From sequence record NC_029020.1: 50,918 bases of DNA; one strand, 5' to 3'. A program made the translations under genes and the position numbers. Below are positions 22,500 to 45,360 of the stretch, piece after piece. Each line of letters starts with the position of its first letter. The first letter of the stretch is position 1. Under the pieces are notes generated by a model that worked only from the letters and a program-made list of their open reading frames with translations, had not been told where the DNA came from and made no database searches.

Positions 22500-22861
22500 T
22501 TACCACCCTTAATGCAGATAGGGAACTCGGGGTCGAGGTTTATGTTGTCTATTTTCAGCATTTCCTTTACTTTTTCTCTGGCCTTCCTGATCATGCGGTA
22601 CAGCGTAATGTTACTGTTCGTGCAGACGCCTAACGCTATGTAGAAGTCCAACGCGGACGCCAGNAGTGCGTCTNNGAGGTCTCCGACTTGGTCTGGCGTC
22701 ACTTTAAGGCTTACCCTGTTCTCCTCGTCCCTGAACGTTATCGTCGACGTGTTGATGACCTCGTAATACTTCTTCGGCAATTTTATCGAAAAACAGTCTA
22801 CGAAATACTCCGCTATCGGCCCTGGCAGATATACTCTCGTGTCCAGCACATAAAACCTCAT
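22496..22861 (-). CDS. Hypothetical protein, 121 aa
   Basis: ORF track; 4-nt overlap with the next gene. Confidence 0.65.
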   Translation of the reverse strand: MRFYVLDTRVYLPGPIAEYFVDCFSIKLPKKYYEVINTSTITFRDEENRVSLKVTPDQVGDLXDAXLASALDFYIALGVCTNSNITLYRMIRKAREKVKEMLKIDNINLDPEFPICIKGGK

Positions 22862-32831: not shown

Positions 32832-32904
32832 CTAACTCGCCAGCTTACGCTGGATCTCGACTGCATCCTTCAGTTGGGTGTATTGTATTATCCTATCCAA
32901 CTTC
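32832..32904. repeat. 73-bp exact copy of the integrase 3' end (direct repeat, copy 1)
   Basis: CTAACTCGCC...CCTATCCAACTTC, identical to 34362-34434. Confidence 0.97.
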
Positions 32905-32959
32905 AGGTTTTAGGATCCTGCTCTTTTGCATAACTGGTTAGGCAAAAATTAATTTTCCT

Positions 32960-33268
32960 TCAGCCCAAAACGGTTATGTCGACTTTTATAGGGAATACCA
33001 TATAAAAGCCGAAAAAGTCGTAGAAAAATATCCAGAACAGTTCACCATTCATGATAATACTGCCTAACATAATCATGTCTCCTTCGGCCCAGTAATCTGG
33101 GACGATCCCGTTTATCGAGTCCCTATCAACTTTTATATGGAAATATTTCAAGATTTCCAATAGAATGTTAGGGTCTTTAGATTTGATATAAGTACTCAGG
33201 ATTTCTTTCAACTTTTCATCCGTTACCCTATTTATTATTTTCATGGCTTCTTCCGTGTTTCTGTCCAT
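32960..33268 (-). CDS. Hypothetical protein, 102 aa (cargo between the 73-bp repeats)
   Basis: ORF track. Confidence 0.6.
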   Translation of the reverse strand: MDRNTEEAMKIINRVTDEKLKEILSTYIKSKDPNILLEILKYFHIKVDRDSINGIVPDYWAEGDMIMLGSIIMNGELFWIFFYDFFGFYMVFPIKVDITVLG

Positions 33269-33326
33269 TTATGTCCACCAGTTCTTGATATGAATAACAT
33301 CTTTTTTATATCTTTCGTTTCGGTAT

Positions 33327-33806
33327 TTGGCACCCATTTCATTTAAATTTATTAGTGTTTCGATATATCGGTTGGTAATGAGGGACTTAACCGACGAAGA
33401 AATACTGAAAATCATGTGCTCGATTGTACCGATATACATTGAGGGTCAACGGCACACCGTTATTATGTACCTAACTGGGTGGTTATATAAGGCAGGAATA
33501 AGCTACAGGTCTGCTAAAAAACTCGTTAAATTAATATGTGAGACGTTTAATGACGGAGAATGCGATGACAGGATATATACATTAGATAGGACTTACGGGT
33601 ATAGGGGGACTCAACCGCAGAAATATAAACTAAAAACCAAAAGCGGGATATACGAACTCCTCGTCGAGGCGTTAAAAGATGAAGAAAAAGCAAAAAGAAT
33701 AATAAGGAAATTGGAGAATATACTCAGTTATAGACCGAAAAGCGTAACGTTATTTGATGTTTTCCCGAAAAAACAGAGTGAGGTGAACATGAATGAGAAT
33801 ATCTGA
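33327..33806 (+). CDS. Stand-alone primase-accessory helical domain (PriCT-1 / pRN1 helix-bundle-like); likely start ATG 33378
   Basis: EGQRHTVIMYLTGWLYKAGIS...DDRIYTLDRTY fits the remembered G.R....L.G.L.K.G...R...L..TY pattern; no AEP catalytic domain. Confidence 0.55.
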   Translation: MAPISFKFISVSIYRLVMRDLTDEEILKIMCSIVPIYIEGQRHTVIMYLTGWLYKAGISYRSAKKLVKLICETFNDGECDDRIYTLDRTYGYRGTQPQKYKLKTKSGIYELLVEALKDEEKAKRIIRKLENILSYRPKSVTLFDVFPKKQSEVNMNENI

Positions 33807-34320
33807 TTTCTTTTCCGAGTACCGTGATAAGCACCCGCTTTATCACTATGTCGTTTCGTCATGGATAAGGTCGAACCCAGGGACGTTTATAGATATAATG
33901 AAAAGGTATAAGGATTGGATATGGTTGAAAGGGAAGCCAGTATTCGTCCAGATGGAATGGCGTCACCCTAATACATTAATGTTCTACGACGTTTATATGA
34001 AAGTTTGGGCACCATACAGGAATATTCCCAATAAATTCAGATACTACCACGTTTTTATAGAAATAAAAACTGGTAAATATAATGATAACTGGGTAACTCA
34101 ATTGAGAAAGCAATATCATAACAGGAAGAGTAGTAAGCTTGGGACTAGATTTGACGATTACCCTCAACTCTTGTTTATAGCTAAGAAATCAGAAATCTCT
34201 AAATTAAAACAAGAACTAGGTAGTTATCCTACTGGTTTCCTTTTATTTTTCGAATTGGATTATATAAAACCCTATATTCAGCGTGACTTGAAATCGCTCT
34301 TATACAAAAAGCTAAGCTAG
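33793..34320 (+). CDS. PD-(D/E)xK restriction-endonuclease-like nuclease
   Basis: FYDVY...VFIEIKTG followed by helix WVTQLRKQY. Confidence 0.6.
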   Translation: MRISDFFSEYRDKHPLYHYVVSSWIRSNPGTFIDIMKRYKDWIWLKGKPVFVQMEWRHPNTLMFYDVYMKVWAPYRNIPNKFRYYHVFIEIKTGKYNDNWVTQLRKQYHNRKSSKLGTRFDDYPQLLFIAKKSEISKLKQELGSYPTGFLLFFELDYIKPYIQRDLKSLLYKKLS

Positions 34321-34361
34321 CTTGACACAAATAACCACCTAGCCTCTTACATAATTTAAGC

Positions 34362-34434
34362 CTAACTCGCCAGCTTACGCTGGATCTCGACTGCATCCTT
34401 CAGTTGGGTGTATTGTATTATCCTATCCAACTTC
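34362..34434. repeat. 73-bp direct repeat, copy 2 (last 73 nt of int, including the catalytic Tyr codon and the stop)
   Basis: Identical to 32832-32904. Confidence 0.97.
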
Positions 34435-35093
34435 TTGTGGCCAGTTACCTTTGCAATGATCGCAGGGTCTGTACCACTCTTTGAGAGAAAGCTGATTAGT
34501 GCATATCGTAGTGAGTGGGTAGTACATTTCAAGTATTTTTTAGCGAACATCCTTATCCTAGCTTTTAAATCGTAGTCGGAAATCGTTAATACGAATCTGT
34601 ACGATTGTTTATTTCTTATGATACTCGGGATGATGAAGAACTTCATATTGCCTTTTTTCTCTGCCTGGAGCTGGAACTCCCTCTGCCCCGACTCCACGAA
34701 CGTCTTGAAAGCCCTGATTGCTTCGCCTATTCTTGAACCGTTAACCAGCTGTATGAGGAGGATCGCGACGTAAGCCTCGTAGGGCATCAGGTTTAGGTCG
34801 TATAACTGTTTGTAGGCTTCCGTGAGAACTTTCTTGGCCTCGAGGAAATCGACTGAATCATCCCAGGTGTGTTCTATCCTCCTCTTTCCCACTGGCTTTA
34901 AAACTTTCTTGAGTATCTCGCTTTCTTCCCTCTTTCTTTCCTTTTCTTCCTTCGGCTTCAGCCCTAGCTTTACGGCAATCATATCAATAATGTCAGTCCA
35001 GTTCTTCTCCCTGGCTTCCTGTAAATACTCTAAAAGTTTAGGGGAGTTATCGGGAAGATTCAAGATAATTTGTTTAAGCTCCTCTTTATCCAT
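34362..35093 (-). CDS. int: Tyrosine recombinase / integrase
   Basis: Catalytic residues: GSRIGEA (R), HSLR (H-x-x-R), TGH (H), IIQYT (Y). Confidence 0.93.
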   Translation of the reverse strand: MDKEELKQIILNLPDNSPKLLEYLQEAREKNWTDIIDMIAVKLGLKPKEEKERKREESEILKKVLKPVGKRRIEHTWDDSVDFLEAKKVLTEAYKQLYDLNLMPYEAYVAILLIQLVNGSRIGEAIRAFKTFVESGQREFQLQAEKKGNMKFFIIPSIIRNKQSYRFVLTISDYDLKARIRMFAKKYLKCTTHSLRYALISFLSKSGTDPAIIAKVTGHKKLDRIIQYTQLKDAVEIQRKLAS

Positions 35094-35212
35094 TTCTCTT
35101 CAACCTCCAAAATTGAATTTTGCTCCTATCAGATTGCCTTATCTCTCCTGGGGTTGACATTTCTCTTTTTCCCGTTATATCCTCAGAAAGAGAAATATAA
35201 AAACTTCACGGC

Positions 35213-35238
35213 GTTTCTCTTAGACCCGTAAGAGAAAC
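35213..35238. terminator. Perfect 10-bp stem-loop downstream of 35248..35541
   Basis: GTTTCTCTTA-GACCCG-TAAGAGAAAC. Confidence 0.5.
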
Positions 35239-35247
35239 AAAATTAGG

Positions 35248-35541
35248 TCAATTGGCTTTTCTACTTCCCATTGCTTTCTCTGCAAATTTTTCGGCTATAT
35301 TCACAATCAACATAACAAGAACCATTAGAAAGGAATCTATAATCAATTGAACCTCTAGGAAAATGCCGACTGAATTTAATCGAATTGAATTAGATATTAC
35401 TTTAGTGTAGATGTTGTTTATATATATCAAATTGACGATTTCTATTATAAAAATTAATACAGCCGAACCCCGCATGATAAGGAGGTTTCTCTTACTTCTT
35501 TTATCTTCTTGATCCGAAAGAGGATTAGGGGATTGAGACAT
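35248..35541 (-). CDS. Small two-TM membrane protein under the conserved promoter cassette
   Basis: 97 aa, two hydrophobic helices. Confidence 0.65.
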   Translation of the reverse strand: MSQSPNPLSDQEDKRSKRNLLIMRGSAVLIFIIEIVNLIYINNIYTKVISNSIRLNSVGIFLEVQLIIDSFLMVLVMLIVNIAEKFAEKAMGSRKAN

Positions 35542-35569
35542 TTTACTCGAGATATCTCTTTGATGAACT

Positions 35570-35622
35570 GATATTTAAGCTTTCTGCCTGACTGGTAAGG
35601 TAGAAAAAAGGCTATTGGCTTT
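35570..35622 (-). promoter_or_regulatory. Conserved promoter cassette A (palindromic operator plus BRE/TATA)
   Basis: Minus strand ...CCTTACCAGTCAGGCAGAAAGCTTAAATATC; 53 bp identical to 36897-36949. Confidence 0.85.
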
Positions 35623-35631
35623 TACCATCAC

Positions 35632-36423
35632 TTAGAATGTTAATGTGCTACACAATGGGCATTTGTAAGTCCTCCCGAAACGTTTCAAGTATTCCTCAGG
35701 ATCCTTTTGAATATCTCGGAAGTATATCCTTTGGTGGTTGTAAAATAACCCCGACCCTCCTTTCCTCAGCTTAGCCTCAGCCTCTACGAACTTTTGGAAG
35801 AACTCTGGGTTCTTTAACGCTAGCACTGCAAAATCTGCTGGTGTCTTGTAAGCAGAGCACCAACAATCGTAAGCTTTTCCGTAAATGTCATAAAGTGGGT
35901 TCTTCTTCAGACCGTTAACCTTTATGTACTCCTCTACATCTTTTTCTGAAAATTCGAAAATAGGAGCATACGTATAAACTTGGAATTTGGGGTGTAAATA
36001 AAATTTCACGGCACGGCTTTTCATCCAACTCTCGTCCTTTCTTACTCCCGTGATAAGGACTATTTCCTCTTTATCCTTGCCCTTCAAGAAGTCTTGTAGA
36101 GGCTCTAGTTTGAGGTAATGTTTACACCACCTCTTTGTCAGTGTAGGGAAACCTATCTTGTTCACCAACTCAAAATAGTTGTATTTGGGCCCTATAATGG
36201 TAAGCTCAATGCCCAACTCTTTAGTCACTTCTTTTACGTAATCCAATAACCCTGGTGTTGCGATACCCGTGTTAATGAATAATGCCTTTGTCTTTTCAGG
36301 ATAAATGGAGTGCGTCAAGTGTAGTGTCACCAATGAGTCTTTGCCACCGCTGAACATGACATAGATTTCTTTAAACCCGAGTAGGATCTTCTTAGCCTCT
36401 TCCTTAACTGCTAGCAGATCCAT
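35632..36423 (-). CDS. PAPS reductase / DndC-like adenine-nucleotide alpha-hydrolase family protein
   Basis: PP-loop FSGGKDS, WCKHYLKLEP, ITGVRKDES, YDCWC, C-terminal CPLC. Confidence 0.88.
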   Translation of the reverse strand: MDLLAVKEEAKKILLGFKEIYVMFSGGKDSLVTLHLTHSIYPEKTKALFINTGIATPGLLDYVKEVTKELGIELTIIGPKYNYFELVNKIGFPTLTKRWCKHYLKLEPLQDFLKGKDKEEIVLITGVRKDESWMKSRAVKFYLHPKFQVYTYAPIFEFSEKDVEEYIKVNGLKKNPLYDIYGKAYDCWCSAYKTPADFAVLALKNPEFFQKFVEAEAKLRKGGSGLFYNHQRIYFRDIQKDPEEYLKRFGRTYKCPLCSTLTF

Positions 36424-36865
36424 GACCTCCCCCTCCCCTTCCCCAATGGAGCGGATGCATCGGGTTGGTTGCGATTGATATACTATCGAGATATATCATG
36501 ATATCGTCGTACTGAGTCATATGGTACTTCAGATATATCACAATATTTTTGTAAAAGTGCCAATATTCTTCATAGATCTTCAACGCAATATATTTTCTAG
36601 ATCTCGCTATTAGCCTTTCTGCTCCATCAAAATAGAAGAATCCTAAATCATCTTCCAGTAGTTGCAAAAACTTCCTAAACTCGTCCTCAGAAAGAGGCAT
36701 ATATCTGTCGAAATCGAAATAGGTATAGATCCTTCCGTCCTCTATCTCTGGGCCCCTTATTTCGAATTTTATGCCTCTTGCCTTCAAAAATTCCTTAATG
36801 GATTCGGTTACATTTTCCCAATCATCCCTTATTTCCTTAGGGATTTCGATCTGAATTTCCGCCAT
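36404..36865 (-). CDS. Acidic small protein, candidate AcrID1-family anti-CRISPR (paralog 1)
   Basis: FDFDRYMPLSEDEFRKF and EYWHFYKNIVIYLKY..DDIMIYL resemble remembered AcrID1 FFDPEVEISKQEFEDL / EWWEFENQYLEFELDY..DEKIFV; paralogous to 38626..39015. Confidence 0.55.
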   Translation of the reverse strand: MAEIQIEIPKEIRDDWENVTESIKEFLKARGIKFEIRGPEIEDGRIYTYFDFDRYMPLSEDEFRKFLQLLEDDLGFFYFDGAERLIARSRKYIALKIYEEYWHFYKNIVIYLKYHMTQYDDIMIYLDSISIATNPMHPLHWGRGGGGHGSASS

Positions 36866-36877
36866 TTGATCCCGCGA

Positions 36878-36949
36878 GATATCTTCTGCCGAAATAGATA
36901 TTTAAGCTTTCTGCCTGACTGGTAAGGTAGAAAAAAGGCTATTGGCTTT
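36878..36949 (-). promoter_or_regulatory. Conserved promoter cassette B
   Basis: GATATCTTCTGCCGAAATAGATATTTAAGCTTTCTGCCTGACTGGTAAGGTAGAAAAAAG; nearly identical to C, and its 53-bp right part is identical to A. Confidence 0.85.
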
Positions 36950-37349
36950 GGGTTTCTCCTTCATCATCGACAAACAGCTGGTTGTTAAGACCCATCCCAT
37001 CGCCTTCCTTCGGCCTGAACACGATCTGCATATTTTCGGGAACTAAGTACGGGTCGAGATCTACGACGGGCTTGGCCAGCTCGCTTGGGATTGATATGTA
37101 ATACTGCGTAAAGACCTTTCCGTTCTTTTTTTCTCGTTTAATCAACCATCTTAATCGGATTCTTAGACCTTTTTTGGCATATCTTCGGTTGGGTTTGAAT
37201 TCTATTATATTATTTTTAATATTGAAATACGGCACATAATTGATTAGGAACACCGCTGACCTGCTGGTGACGTTTATGTATCTTAACATATACTCTTTCC
37301 CATTTTTCCTGTTTATCTTTACCCTCCACCTCAGCTTGACTTCGACCAT
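36939..37349 (-). CDS. Basic protein with two tandem AbrB/SpoVT-like swapped-hairpin repeats; candidate regulator
   Basis: VKLRWRVKINRKNGKEYMLRYINV / IRLRWLIKREKKNGKVFTQYYISIP. Confidence 0.55.
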   Translation of the reverse strand: MVEVKLRWRVKINRKNGKEYMLRYINVTSRSAVFLINYVPYFNIKNNIIEFKPNRRYAKKGLRIRLRWLIKREKKNGKVFTQYYISIPSELAKPVVDLDPYLVPENMQIVFRPKEGDGMGLNNQLFVDDEGETQSQ

Positions 37350-37380
37350 GCTTTCCTATTATTGTATTGATATGAAACCC

Positions 37381-37410
37381 TATAAATATACCTTACCTGT
37401 CAGGCAGAAA
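37381..37410 (-). promoter_or_regulatory. Promoter cassette E with the operator inverted relative to A/B/C
   Basis: Minus strand TTTCTGCCTGACAGGTAAGG directly followed by TATATTTATA, 31 nt upstream of ATG 37349. Confidence 0.75.
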
Positions 37411-37522
37411 GAAGGGGAAAGAAAAAATATTGAACTGACGTAACAGTTTGATTGCAGAGGGGTTAACACCCAACAAACAAAGTGCCACGTCAAAAAGCGT
37501 GGCGAGGTAAAAATCGTAAACT

Positions 37523-38041
37523 TTACCGCACCGGATTTAGGCAGATAGGATATTCATATTCCTTTTCGTACTCCTCGTAAGCCTCGTCTTCGTTTCCAGG
37601 GTTTTTCATCTCCTCTATTAACTTATTGATGAAATCCCTGCTGAAAGTGTTTATGACAAGCAGAGCCCTTCGTTCATTACAAATTACGTTCCCGTTCTCT
37701 ATCTTTTCAATCCTATCGCAGAAGTCGAATATCATGTATTCACTTGATAACGATGCCAATTTCTCTCTAGGAATTTTCAGATCTATAGGAAAATATGAAC
37801 CGTCGTTGTCTATCACCAGGCTACAAAACACGACACATTTGTTACCTTTCCTGTCCTTGTATAAGTGCAGAGACGCAAGGATTAGAGGAAATGCCGAATG
37901 AGGGATATCCCCGAAATATACCACTACTGGCTTGTTTTCCGAATTTAACGCGAAAATGGCGACCCTCTTTCCGAGATTATTTACGACAATCTTTAACTCG
38001 TTGGGGTCGACACCTCCTAATTTTATCCCTACTTCCGCCAT
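37523..38041 (-). CDS. Hypothetical protein, 172 aa, under cassette C; candidate anti-defence gene
   Basis: ORF track; acidic C-terminus; begins MAE like the cassette B gene. Confidence 0.7.
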   Translation of the reverse strand: MAEVGIKLGGVDPNELKIVVNNLGKRVAIFALNSENKPVVVYFGDIPHSAFPLILASLHLYKDRKGNKCVVFCSLVIDNDGSYFPIDLKIPREKLASLSSEYMIFDFCDRIEKIENGNVICNERRALLVINTFSRDFINKLIEEMKNPGNEDEAYEEYEKEYEYPICLNPVR

Positions 38042-38055
38042 TTATGTCCCCGCAA

Positions 38056-38114
38056 GATATCTTCTGCCGAAATAGATATTTAAACTTTCTGCCTGACTAG
38101 TAAGGTAGAAAAAG
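38056..38114 (-). promoter_or_regulatory. Conserved promoter cassette C
   Basis: GATATCTTCTGCCGAAATAGATATTTAAACTTTCTGCCTGACTAGTAAGGTAGAAAAAG. Confidence 0.85.
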
Positions 38115-38186
38115 CCTTAGACCCTAACGGCCCTTAGGCGGGCATCTCTTATTTATAAACCGAATCGGGACAAGTAGATAATTGTA

Positions 38187-38492
38187 ATGGGAATCTTAGA
38201 AGAAGTCCAAAACGCCTTGGCGTACTATCAAAAAACAGCAGTTAGCGAAAAAGATTCCCTGTACCTCCACAACATCTACTCGCAGTTGTACTACATTTTA
38301 ACCGTAGAAAACAGACCGCTTGGTGCCGATGAGTTCGACAGCCTGTTGAAAGCCTTAGGGGTAAACGACACAACGCTACTGGTGCAGGAATACCAGTCCT
38401 TAACCGATGAACAGAAGAAGCAGATCCTCATGCAGATCCTGCAAATGATAGAAAGCGTGATGAGGAATATACATACAATGGTAAACTACTAA
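38187..38492 (+). CDS. Hypothetical helical protein, 101 aa
   Basis: ORF track; TATA TTTATAAA at ~38152. Confidence 0.65.
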   Translation: MGILEEVQNALAYYQKTAVSEKDSLYLHNIYSQLYYILTVENRPLGADEFDSLLKALGVNDTTLLVQEYQSLTDEQKKQILMQILQMIESVMRNIHTMVNY

Positions 38493-38625
38493 TTCCCTCC
38501 TTAAGAATTAAGAATTTTTTCGTTTTCCCTTCTAGTCTTGCGTCTGCTCCCCGCCGGGCTTCCCCGATATACAGCTGTTTAAAGCTTAAATTATAAAGGC
38601 CGGCAAGATGTTACCTCGATAGCAA

Positions 38626-39015
38626 ATGAACGGAAACGAGATAGTAGAAGAAATTTTAGAATTCCTAAATAAAAAAGGTGCTAAGTTCGATATAGATCAG
38701 TTCGAAACCGAAAACAAAACGCTCAAACTTGAAGTAGAATTCCCGAAACCTATAATTCTAACTGAAACGGAATACGATATGCTGTATGATCTTCTGAAGA
38801 GCTTAGGGTTCTATCCTGTAAACGGGGCCGAAAACAAGATAAACGAATATGTAGGGTATAAAAATTATACAGGAATAGAAGAATTCGAAAACGATGCAGG
38901 AGACAAAATATGGTTAGAATACAACAAGGTTTCGGTGGGAGGAGAGACTACTTATTTTGTTAAAAATGTAGAAGTCGAGCTCAATACGGAAGAATTCATG
39001 AACCTGCTTTTCTAA
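38626..39015 (+). CDS. Acidic small protein, candidate AcrID1-family anti-CRISPR (paralog 2)
   Basis: IVEEILEFLNKKGAKFDI..LTETEY..LL..LGF...GAENKI aligns with 36404..36865; contains EEFEN; promoter AAAGCTTAAATT at 38581. Confidence 0.55.
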   Translation: MNGNEIVEEILEFLNKKGAKFDIDQFETENKTLKLEVEFPKPIILTETEYDMLYDLLKSLGFYPVNGAENKINEYVGYKNYTGIEEFENDAGDKIWLEYNKVSVGGETTYFVKNVEVELNTEEFMNLLF

Positions 39016-39272
39016 ACCCTGAAAGCATCATTTTATTTTTTATCTTTAATAAGAAAGCCAGTTTTTCAGCTATAGAGTTCTTGAAAAGTCGCGGTTCAGT
39101 CTGCTAAACATACGGTTGAGGCGAAATCATGGCAAGCCTAACGAGGTTACGGTAAGTTACGCGTCTTAGAACGTCTGGGAATCAACCCCTTAGTCGAAAT
39201 AGAAAAAAGAATAATATATTTAAAAAGAAAAAATTGGCTTCAAAAAGAGAATACGAGACGGCACGTGCTTTT

Positions 39273-44696: not shown

Positions 44697-44714
44697 TGAA
44701 TTTTACGGTCGGTA

Positions 44715-44762
44715 TAGATATTTAAAGCTTCTGCCTGCCTAGTAAGGCAGAAAACTTAAATA
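44715..44762. promoter_or_regulatory. Symmetric divergent promoter cassette D
   Basis: TATTTAA-AGC-TTCTGCCT-GCCTAGTA-AGGCAGAA-AAC-TTAAATA, a two-fold symmetric operator with a TATA box on each side. Confidence 0.85.
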
Positions 44763-44775
44763 CCAGCTTGCTCAA

Positions 44776-45360
44776 ATGATTACTTGGTCAAAAATGTCCC
44801 AGGCCCAACACCCCAAAGACGAGGAGATTTATGAAGTGCTGAAGAAAGAAGGGTTGGAGGATCTTTACGATCTCATAATGAAATACAAAGATGTGGCGGA
44901 ACCACTTTTGAAGGAAATATTATCAAACAAGGACGAAGTAAAGAACATGATCGATACTTTGAAGAAAGAAGGGTTGGAAGATTTTTTAAAGGATGTAATC
45001 ATGGCTTATAACCCCAGAGCCATATTCGAACGGATTATTAAAACAAAACACGCATTAAAGAGGATTATAGACAAGTATGAGCAGGGCAACAATAAGGTAG
45101 CTTTTGATAAAGCCAATAATAAGAATACGATCGTCGCTATCAAATTCAGAACTCCAGAAGAAATGGAGGAATTCAATCGATTAGCCATTGAAATGGATGA
45201 CCTTAGAAATGGAAAAGAGCCCGAAGCCTTGGAAATGACATACGAAGAATTCGCTCAAAGGTTCAAACCGAGAATGATATGGTATAAAAGAATAGGGAGC
45301 GAGAAAGAGGGTACTTATTCTNCTTTGATGGGAGGTTACAGATTTGACGAAGAATTATAA
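44776..45360 (+). CDS. Hypothetical acidic helical protein with an internal 40-aa-spaced repeat
   Basis: LKKEGLED occurs twice; identical 19-bp DNA at 44840 and 44960. Confidence 0.7.
   Translation: MITWSKMSQAQHPKDEEIYEVLKKEGLEDLYDLIMKYKDVAEPLLKEILSNKDEVKNMIDTLKKEGLEDFLKDVIMAYNPRAIFERIIKTKHALKRIIDKYEQGNNKVAFDKANNKNTIVAIKFRTPEEMEEFNRLAIEMDDLRNGKEPEALEMTYEEFAQRFKPRMIWYKRIGSEKEGTYSXLMGGYRFDEEL

What the first reader, a model, noticed from the sequence alone, without database searches (positions are those of the whole stretch)
35570..36949. 53-bp exact direct repeats delimit a 1327-bp PAPS-reductase plus Acr-like module
Copies A and B are identical over 53 bp. The identity extends past the promoter into CTATTGGCTTT, which in copy B is the stop and last codons of the 136-aa gene but in copy A is an orphan remnant. 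This is the footprint expected if the module entered, or can leave, by recombination between promoter cassettes. It is a second repeat-bounded cassette within 1.2 kb of the integrase-tail cassette.
Basis: partly seen in the sequence, partly recalled or inferred. Interest (0 to 1): 0.65.

Follow-up and report, generated by a model that had tools for sequence, protein, structure and literature searches.

The report
Promoter repeats bracket an optional gene-pair
In the hot-spring archaeal virus SMV2, two identical copies of an already-described early-gene promoter cassette bracket a two-gene segment, and a near-identical virus variant from a Yellowstone metagenome lacks exactly that segment and keeps one cassette, so the segment is a real gain/loss unit made by recombination at these cassettes.

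Summary
The window is the complete genome of Sulfolobus monocaudavirus SMV2. The 53-bp exact direct repeat (35570-35622 and 36897-36949, 1327 bp apart) is real. It is the second-longest exact repeat in the genome.

The repeat is a terminator T-tract, a palindromic operator and BRE/TATA. It belongs to a five-copy promoter family that Bhoobalan-Chitty et al. 2024 described as the SMV2 anti-defence/early regulatory sequence. Their list has gp37, gp39, gp41, gp51 and gp52, with gp38 as low-probability. So the cassette and regulon are known.

New here:
- Copy A carries an orphan 11-nt 3' end of gp40.
- Copy B is an exact chimera: 53 bp of copy A plus 29 bp of copy C, overlapping in the TATA box.
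- A metagenome contig 97-99% identical to SMV2 (L018) reads gp40, one cassette, gp37. The 1327-bp unit is exactly absent.
- An independent contig (L020, 99.6%) confirms the filled form.
- The PAPS-reductase ORF alone sits in four different contexts in related viruses.

Insertion into the SMV2 lineage is favoured over deletion but not proven. This scan noted a similar junction-swapping pattern on another virus piece (s1-165015).

The parts
35570..35622 (-). Copy A of the 53-bp exact repeat. On the gene strand it reads: 11-nt gp40 tail, T-tract, 24-bp operator, BRE/TATA. It drives gp37.
36897..36949 (-). Copy B of the 53-bp exact repeat, in its native context. Its first 11 nt on the gene strand are the last codons and stop codon of gp40. 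It drives gp39-gp38.
35612..35622 (-). Orphan copy of the gp40 3' end (AAAGCCAATAG on the gene strand), 9 bp after the gp38 stop codon and in no ORF. It is a recombination scar.
35623..36896 (-). The 1274-bp unique interior of the repeat unit: C-type 5' spacer, gp39, gp38 and 9 bp. It is absent from variant L018.
36404..36865 (-). gp39 (153 aa). Published predicted anti-defence gene ADG.63. It is a paralogue of gp43. Its model's best fold match is AcrID1, and that match is weak.
35632..36423 (-). gp38, a PAPS-reductase/PP-loop superfamily protein. It overlaps the gp39 end by 20 nt, so the two form an operon. The ORF alone is shared with ATSV, YNP2 and L015.
35248..35541 (-). gp37 (97 aa), driven by copy A. 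Published as a putative leucine-zipper repressor (ADa, ADG.62). It directly follows gp40 and a single cassette in L018.
36939..37349 (-). gp40 (136 aa). Its 3' end lies inside the repeat. It is conserved in L012 (76% aa), SMV1, SMV3 and SMV4 (50-55%) and YNP2 (33%).
36877..36905 (-). 29 bp of cassette B identical to cassette C (38055-38083). It overlaps the 53-bp A/B identity in the 9-bp TATA box (36897-36905), so B is an exact A/C chimera.
38053..38127 (-). Cassette C, which drives gp41 (172 aa, 37523-38041).
37386..37411 (+). Copy D: the operator alone, in flipped orientation, directly upstream of a different TATA box for gp40.
44714..44790 (.). Copy E: a perfect 8-N8-8 palindrome between two divergent TATA boxes, serving gp51-gp50-gp49 and gp52.
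34362..35093 (-). Integrase gp36. Its last 73 bp (34362-34434) are repeated exactly at 32832-32904, bounding a 1530-bp unit that is also exactly absent from L018.

Best explanation
The 53-bp repeat is two copies of a self-contained junction cassette of the virus SMV2. On the gene strand it reads: a T-tract that probably terminates the upstream gene, a 24-bp imperfect palindrome (8-bp arms, N8 spacer) abutting BRE, and a strong TATA box about 40 nt before the start codon. Five transcription units of SMV2 carry this cassette. It is the published early/anti-defence regulatory sequence, presumably bound by a virus-encoded dimeric repressor.

The gp39-gp38 operon between copies B and A is an optional segment. 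In the population there is an empty allele (gp40, cassette, gp37) and a filled allele (gp40, cassette B, gp39-gp38, cassette A, gp37).

The filled allele was most likely made in the SMV2 lineage by recombination between co-replicating variant genomes. One exchange fell inside the cassette at the TATA box, which made B a chimera of an A-type upstream half and a C-type 5' spacer. One illegitimate join linked the 3' flank of gp38 to a point 11 nt before the gp40 stop codon. This duplicated the cassette together with the gp40 tail.

The newcomer operon therefore gets a ready-made terminator, operator and promoter, and gp37 keeps its own. The two exact 53-bp repeats are now a substrate for precise loss by homologous recombination, which would regenerate the empty allele.

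Shown: the repeats, the scar, the chimera, both alleles, and the variable cargo in relatives. Inferred: promoter, terminator and operator function; the direction of the event; continuing excision.
For: Repeat, scar and chimera:
- Exact repeat and orphan tail.
- Only four exact repeats of 25 bp or more in the genome, and B = A(53) + C(29) overlapping in the TATA box.
- Five copies, in either orientation relative to a TATA box, one of them bidirectional.

The cassette family:
- The same operator-TATA architecture occurs in SMV1 (3 sites), SMV3 (6) and SMV4 (2), with 0 hits for the control pattern.
- The published description of the SMV2 motif and its gene list: PMC11065993.

The two alleles:
- Empty allele L018, with B-type left flank and A-type right flank.
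- Filled allele in the independent contig L020, with both exact copies.

Relatives:
- More distant relative L012 has gp40, the same tail, operator, TATA and A-type spacer, then unrelated cargo. Homology stops right after ATGGCGG.
- The PAPS-reductase ORF is 84-85% nt identical to ATSV and YNP2, while the neighbouring integrase is only 69-75%. Homology ends at the start and stop codons, and the gene sits in four contexts.

Polarity: the one variable operator base is T in L018, L012 and cassette C but C in both A and B.
Against:
- Polarity rests on a single base. Deletion in the L018 lineage plus later homogenisation of A and B is possible.
- L018 is a low-coverage Sanger scaffold with a 332-N gap elsewhere. 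The gap does not touch either junction.
- No transcript data exist for SMV2, so promoter, terminator and operator roles are predictions, both mine and the paper's.
- No donor variant (gp40, cassette B, gp39-gp38 without gp37) was found.
- Only about 13 of the 53 bp are likely free of functional constraint. Exactness therefore dates the event only loosely.
Confidence: 0.8

Rival explanations
1. Reverse polarity. The filled arrangement is ancestral for the SMV2/L018 clade, and L018 lost gp39-gp38 by homologous recombination (pop-out) between the two 53-bp repeats. The same would hold for the integrase-tail unit.
For: L018 is exactly the product expected from A x B recombination. Collapse of direct repeats is seen between SMV1 and its laboratory derivative SMV1a: one unit of a 276-bp tandem repeat is lost, and there are deletions among the gp10 internal repeats.
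Against: The operator base is T in L018, L012 and cassette C but C in both SMV2 copies. Deletion therefore needs an extra mutation plus conversion. L012 and L018 both have the tail-operator-TATA-A-spacer unit contiguous after gp40, as expected of the ancestral state. Two independent precise deletions would be needed in one lineage.
Confidence: 0.25
2. Integron-like site-specific capture. The neighbouring tyrosine integrase, or another recombinase, uses the 24-bp palindrome as a core site and inserts or excises gene cassettes there.
For: The 8-N8-8 geometry resembles a tyrosine-recombinase core site. Two repeat-bounded units flank the integrase gene, and both are absent from L018.
Against: Neither junction lies in the palindrome's centre. 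The A/C switch in cassette B is in the TATA box, and the other junction is about 20 bp upstream, in the gp40 tail. The family-wide consensus is an 11-N2-11 near-perfect palindrome placed next to TATA in either orientation, typical of a dimeric regulator's operator. The second unit is bounded by a different sequence, the integrase tail.
Confidence: 0.04
3. No mobility. The identity is purifying selection and/or short-patch gene conversion among paralogous promoters, and the gene order is fixed.
For: About 40 of the 53 bp are plausibly functional. L012, which is 25% diverged in gp40, keeps about 49 of the 53 positions plus a 1-nt insertion.
Against: The orphan 11-nt coding tail has no function in copy A. 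Copies C and E differ at several positions. The empty allele exists.
Confidence: 0.04
4. Assembly artefact. The tandem arrangement in KP238129 arose when two co-existing variants were stitched together through a shared k-mer.
For: The genome comes from environmental or enrichment sequencing, and variants do co-exist.
Against: Independent JGI contig L020 (99.6% identical, 2759 bp, no N) spans gp41, gp40, B, gp39, gp38, A and gp37, with both exact copies. The join of the gp38 3' flank to the gp40 tail needs a real molecule.
Confidence: 0.02

Closest known systems
Virus-specific early/anti-defence-gene (ADG) regulatory sequences of archaeal viruses (Bhoobalan-Chitty et al. 2024, Nat Commun, PMC11065993)
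   Same: It is the same element. The paper reports an SMV2 consensus with a strong BRE/TATA and inverted repeats overlapping BRE. It lists gp37 (regulator candidate), gp39, gp41, gp51 and gp52 as ADGs, and gp38 and gp50 as low-probability ADGs.
   Different: In the sections and supplements I searched, the paper does not mention the exact A/B duplication, the gp40-tail scar, the A/C chimera, the flipped operator before gp40, or the empty and filled alleles.
Aca-controlled anti-CRISPR operons of bacterial phages, including Aca-regulated PAPS reductases (NAR 2026, PMC13551039)
   Same: A palindromic operator at a strong early promoter, small fast-evolving genes, and a PAPS-reductase/DndC-like enzyme in the same regulated operon.
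   Different: This is an archaeal BRE/TATA promoter. The regulator is unidentified (gp37, the gp50 RHH protein or gp40). No function has been tested.
Mosaic exchange at conserved boundary or regulatory sequences in tailed phages (the modular theory, e.g. lambdoid phages; from my own knowledge)
   Same: Short conserved intergenic sequences mark the breakpoints where alternative gene modules are exchanged between related viruses.
   Different: Here one junction is homologous (inside the cassette) and the other illegitimate. This stacked two alternative cargos in tandem and duplicated the cassette.
Integron gene cassettes (attC/attI, IntI)
   Same: An array of promoter-dependent small cargo genes separated by imperfect palindromes, next to a tyrosine recombinase gene.
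   Different: Each cassette here carries its own promoter. The junctions do not fall in the palindrome. No evidence links the integrase to the events.

Membership tests
SMV2 ADG/early regulatory-sequence family (PMC11065993) | A strong BRE/TATA core promoter at a suitable distance from the start codon | tested here: met
   A TTAAATA-type TATA box preceded by a purine-rich BRE lies 37-43 nt before the ATG in copies A, B, C, E and L012. Activity itself was not measured.
SMV2 ADG/early regulatory-sequence family (PMC11065993) | A shared flanking regulatory sequence (inverted repeats overlapping BRE) repeated in the same genome | tested here: met
   The 8-N8-8 palindrome occurs at 35582, 36909, 37386, 38087 and 44729. 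Shuffled and reversed controls give 0.
SMV2 ADG/early regulatory-sequence family (PMC11065993) | The downstream genes are those the paper lists | tested here: met
   Supplementary Data list gp37, gp39, gp41, gp51 and gp52, with gp38 and gp50 as low-probability. Coordinates agree.
PAPS reductase / PP-loop ATP-pyrophosphatase superfamily (PF01507), for gp38 | Pfam domain above the gathering score, and a PP-loop SGGKDS motif | tested here: met
   PF01507 at 95.3 bits against a cut-off of 22.5. SGGKDS is seen in the translation.
CysH (assimilatory PAPS reductase) or DndC equivalogs, for gp38 | Score above the curated NCBIfam cut-off | tested here: not met
   CysH PRK02090 scores 68 against 154. 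DndC TIGR03183 scores 38.8 against 290. The best match is the archaeal PUA-PAPS-like hypothetical PRK08557, at 101 against 366. Only superfamily membership is supported.
AcrID1 anti-CRISPR family, for gp39 | Sequence or fold homology to SIRV AcrID1 | tested here: inconclusive
   No sequence match in the PDB. The model has pLDDT 82.7. The best VIA hit is 6exp, Z 7.8, rmsd 4.0 A, 85 of 96 residues, with 2h36 and 3df6 close behind. This Z is within the range the tool calls common.
AcrID1 anti-CRISPR family, for gp39 | Inhibition of type I-D CRISPR-Cas (binding Cas10d) | not testable with these tools
   Needs an experiment.
Site-specific (integron-like) cassette system | Recombination junctions inside the recombinase core site (the centre of the palindrome) | tested here: not met
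   The junctions lie in the TATA box and in the gp40 tail.
Transposable element / MITE | Terminal inverted repeats, target-site duplication of a few bp, a transposase or multiple dispersed copies | tested here: not met
   The interior has no transposase. The ends are 53-bp direct repeats of resident sequence. No further copy exists in the genome.

The most novel reading that the evidence does not exclude
The terminator-operator-promoter cassettes of SMV-type viruses may be more than regulatory sites. They may work as a standing plug-and-play recombination scaffold. Anti-defence genes would be stacked, swapped and dropped at these cassettes at appreciable frequency during co-infection, with every newcomer put automatically under the early repressor circuit. 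That would be a homologous-recombination analogue of an integron for archaeal viruses.
Probability: 0.3. Interest if true: 0.6.

Novelty: new member of a known kind. Interest (0 to 1): 0.42.

Why it matters
The promoter family was already used to predict anti-defence genes in archaeal viruses. This case adds population-level evidence that the same cassettes mark the exact breakpoints of gene gain and loss. Two natural alleles differ by precisely one cassette-bounded operon, and a distant relative has different cargo behind the same cassette.

This gives a concrete, testable route by which archaeal viruses could reshuffle anti-defence genes without breaking regulation. It also suggests a practical way to find accessory cargo: look between duplicated cassettes. 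Finally, it flags gp39-gp38 (an AcrID1-like-fold protein plus a PP-loop enzyme) as a dispensable pair worth testing against Sulfolobales defence systems.

Tried and rejected
I did not try another route.
- The cassette core was not found in IMG/VR or in GTDB genomes. The single metagenome scan gave only L012.
- Protein-guided IMG/VR scans for gp40 and gp39 found nothing.
- Word searches for gp39 and gp37 found only themselves. The published MAG homologues (39% and 47% identical) are evidently beyond that tool's reach.
- ATSV A186 is not a gp39 homologue, so gp39 and PAPS reductase do not form a conserved pair.
- The gp40 structure prediction failed (pLDDT 52.5 with two sequences), so I did not test whether gp40 is a DNA-binding regulator.
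- Rfam gave no hit in 34000-39000.
- The first block-identity script mis-anchored copies C and E by one base. Only its A, B and L012 rows and its TATA-ATG distances are used.
It was redone by reference.
- The large representative-protein search, complex prediction and the atlas searches were not used, because the claim did not depend on them.

Full report
**Identity of the window.** The window is the complete circular genome of Sulfolobus monocaudavirus SMV2 (KP238129 / NC_029020, 50,918 bp). It matches at 100% over the query and the record length is the same. Annotated genes in the region, all on the minus strand, are:
- gp36 integrase, 34362-35093
- gp37, 35248-35541, 97 aa
- gp38 PAPS-reductase family, 35632-36423
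- gp39, 36404-36865, 153 aa
- gp40, 36939-37349, 136 aa
- gp41, 37523-38041, 172 aa

**The observation.** 35570-35622 and 36897-36949 are identical over exactly 53 bp, 1327 bp apart. Genome-wide there are only four exact direct repeats of 25 bp or more:
- 73 bp, the integrase 3' end (32832 and 34362)
- this 53 bp
- 33 bp inside gp14
- 29 bp, 36877-36905 = 38055-38083

The 23-nt core has 4 hits with 3 or fewer mismatches, against 0 in 100 shuffles. On the gene strand the repeat begins with AAAGCCAATAG. In copy B this is the last codons and the stop codon of gp40. In copy A it lies 9 bp after the gp38 stop codon and in no ORF.

**What the repeat is.** On the gene strand it reads: gp40 tail (11 nt), CC plus a T6 tract, a 24-bp imperfect palindrome (TTCTRCCT-N8-AGGCAGAA), a purine-rich BRE, and a TTAAATA TATA box. 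The ATG lies 37-43 nt further on.

There are five copies:
- A drives gp37.
- B drives the overlapping gp39-gp38 pair.
- C (38053-38127) drives gp41.
- D (37386-37411) is the palindrome alone, flipped, directly upstream of a different TATA box for gp40.
- E (44714-44790) is a perfect 8-N8-8 palindrome between two divergent TATA boxes, serving gp51-gp50-gp49 and gp52. gp50 is an RHH/CopG protein and gp51 is SSV1 D-63-like.

The same architecture is found in SMV1 (3 sites), SMV3 (6) and SMV4 (2), with zero hits for the reversed control. It consists of an 11-N2-11 palindrome, consensus TTCTGCCTAAC-NN-GTTAGGCAGAA, abutting a TATA box. It is not found in ATSV or YNP2. An orientation-independent palindrome at BRE/TATA is what a dimeric regulator's operator looks like. 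The T-tract is a plausible archaeal terminator for the upstream gene. That is inference from general knowledge of Sulfolobus transcription signals.

**Prior knowledge.** Bhoobalan-Chitty et al. 2024 (PMC11065993) already describe this element. [quoted passage not shown] They propose gp37 as a leucine-zipper regulator. They list gp39, gp41, gp51 and gp52 as predicted anti-defence genes, and gp38 and gp50 as low-probability ones.

A 2026 NAR paper (PMC13551039) reports PAPS reductases in Aca-regulated operons of bacterial phages and discusses DndC/SspD-like roles. The cassette family, the regulon and the 'Acr-like' label are therefore known predictions. None has been tested experimentally for SMV2.

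**The enclosed genes.**
- gp38 belongs to the PAPS-reductase/PP-loop superfamily: PF01507 at 95 bits, phrog_424, and an SGGKDS motif. It fails every curated equivalog cut-off, including CysH and DndC, and is closest to archaeal PUA-PAPS-like hypotheticals.
- gp39 is a paralogue of gp43 (34% identity over 80 aa; both match phrog_24726).
- A model of gp39 (pLDDT 82.7) has SIRV3 AcrID1 as its best VIA-align match: 6exp, Z 7.8, rmsd 4.0 A, 85 of 96 residues. The related archaeal-virus proteins 2h36 and 3df6 follow. The Foldseek TM-scores are low, and the tool itself says Z below 8 is common. The AcrID1-like fold is suggestive only.

**Evidence of recombination inside SMV2.** Cassette B is an exact chimera. 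Its upstream 53 bp equal copy A. Its TATA box plus 5' spacer (29 bp) equal copy C. The two identities overlap in the 9-bp TATA box. B and C also share the first three codons, ATGGCGGAA.

**Comparative evidence.**
1. SMV1, SMV3 and SMV4 have entirely different genes between the integrase and the conserved 101-aa gene. Their gp40 homologues lie downstream of the integrase.
2. ATSV has A186, PAPS reductase, integrase, with no gp37 or cassette. YNP2 has a truncated PAPS-reductase gene near the integrase in the other orientation. IMG/VR contig L015 has the gene in a fourth context. The PAPS-reductase ORF is 84-85% nt identical to ATSV and YNP2, while the adjacent integrase is only 69-75%. Homology begins at the ATG and ends at the stop codon. 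This ORF moves on its own. gp39 is not its conserved partner.
3. Metagenome contig L012 (Ga0315298_1016145) encodes a gp40 homologue (76% aa) preceded by the flipped operator. It ends with the same AAAGCCAATAG, followed by T-tract, operator, TATA box, an A-type spacer and ATGGCGG. Three unrelated genes and a convergent integrase come next. Homology with SMV2 stops right after the start codon region. The unit of gp40 tail, operator, TATA and A-type spacer is therefore the ancestral contiguous unit behind gp40.

**The decisive comparison.** The exact gp37 protein occurs on JGI contig L018 (sample 2022920009, YNPsite01 Celera scaffold, 4815 bp). L018 is 97-99% identical to SMV2. Its gene order is gp43, a gap of 332 N, gp40, gp37, integrase, gp32, gp31, gp30.

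At the junction L018 has one cassette. It matches the SMV2 repeat at 52 of 53 positions. Its left flank is that of copy B (2 mismatches in 200). Its right flank is that of copy A (0 in 300). The alternative flanks mismatch at 157 and 208 positions. The 1327-bp unit is thus exactly absent.

The 1530-bp unit bounded by the integrase tail is also exactly absent, leaving one tail copy. A second contig with the same neighbours exists. The N gap (1190-1521) touches neither junction.

Conversely, JGI contig L020 (3300005349, Ga0074235_10010, 2759 bp, no N) is collinear with SMV2 38029-35271 at 99.6% identity and holds both exact 53-bp copies. The filled arrangement is therefore not an artefact of the GenBank assembly.

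**Polarity.** The only difference in L018's cassette is an operator base. It is T in L018, L012 and cassette C, and C in both SMV2 copies and both L020 copies. The most parsimonious order is T-to-C in a single-copy ancestor, followed by duplication with insertion. Deletion in L018 would need an extra mutation plus conversion. This rests on one base, so I put insertion or stacking in the SMV2 lineage at about 60-70% within the overall gain/loss reading.

**Mechanism (inferred).** The simplest model is one illegitimate crossover between two co-replicating variants that carry alternative cargo behind gp40. One variant has cassette B and gp39-gp38. The other is L018-like, with cassette A and gp37. 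The crossover joins the 3' flank of gp38 to a point 11 nt before the other genome's gp40 stop codon. This stacks both cargos and duplicates the cassette with the tail. The A/C chimerism of B records a separate homologous exchange inside the cassette.

Neither junction falls in the centre of the palindrome, which argues against a site-specific, integron-like mechanism. SMV1 against its laboratory derivative SMV1a shows that repeat-mediated deletions occur in this virus group. One unit of a 276-bp tandem repeat is lost, as are internal repeats of gp10. Precise loss between the 53-bp repeats is therefore plausible but unobserved.

**Verdict.** The cassette family is already published. The scar, the chimera and the empty and filled alleles are, as far as I could find, new. 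They are an instance of a known kind of process: mosaic recombination at conserved regulatory junctions. A similar junction-swapping pattern was noted by this scan on another virus piece (s1-165015); I did not check that note.

Noticed in passing
window 32832-34434; L018:3150-3330: The 1530-bp unit bounded by the exact 73-bp integrase-tail repeat (cargo gp33-gp35) is exactly absent from variant L018. L018 keeps one tail copy followed by the remnant's downstream flank. This site too has natural empty and filled alleles.
   Followed up: partly
window 35248-35541 (gp37): gp37 is published as a putative leucine-zipper repressor. It has two strongly hydrophobic 19-aa stretches, around residues 20-40 and 58-84, with Kyte-Doolittle means up to 2.4. 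It could equally be a small membrane protein. The operator family occurs in SMV1-4, but no gp37 homologue turned up in them (word search; the paper names only one MAG homologue). The RHH protein gp50 (called highly conserved in the paper, with an SMV3 counterpart listed) and gp40 (homologues in SMV1, 3 and 4) fit the phyletic pattern better.
   Followed up: partly
window 37412-37522 (minus strand), also L012:300-370 and YNP2 locus L010:4449-4509: The gp41-gp40 intergenic region folds into a long hairpin (-25.7 kcal/mol, z -3.9) followed by a T-rich tract. About 60 nt of it are conserved next to the PAPS-reductase gene in YNP2 (82%), and a similar stretch lies upstream of gp40 in L012. There is no Rfam match. 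It may be a terminator or stability element, or a small RNA.
   Followed up: partly
window 36404-36445: The last ~13 residues of gp39 are glycine-rich. Residues 137-153 are modelled below pLDDT 50. The tail is encoded by the purine-rich stretch just upstream of and overlapping the gp38 start codon. It looks like read-through into the former upstream region of the PAPS-reductase gene, which would be another recombination joint.
   Followed up: no
SMV3 locus L008:1197-2436: In SMV3 the gp40 homologue is followed by three consecutive small genes, each preceded by its own operator-TATA cassette. This is the same layout as in SMV2: gp40, then an array of cassette-driven genes.
   Followed up: partly
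L013 (SMV1) versus L014 (SMV1a): Relative to SMV1, SMV1a lacks one unit of a 276-bp tandem repeat (gp01/gp02), the IS200/605 element, about 1.1 kb of gp10 internal repeats, and 138 bp at 38950-39087. It has a 55-bp insertion near 22800.
   Followed up: partly
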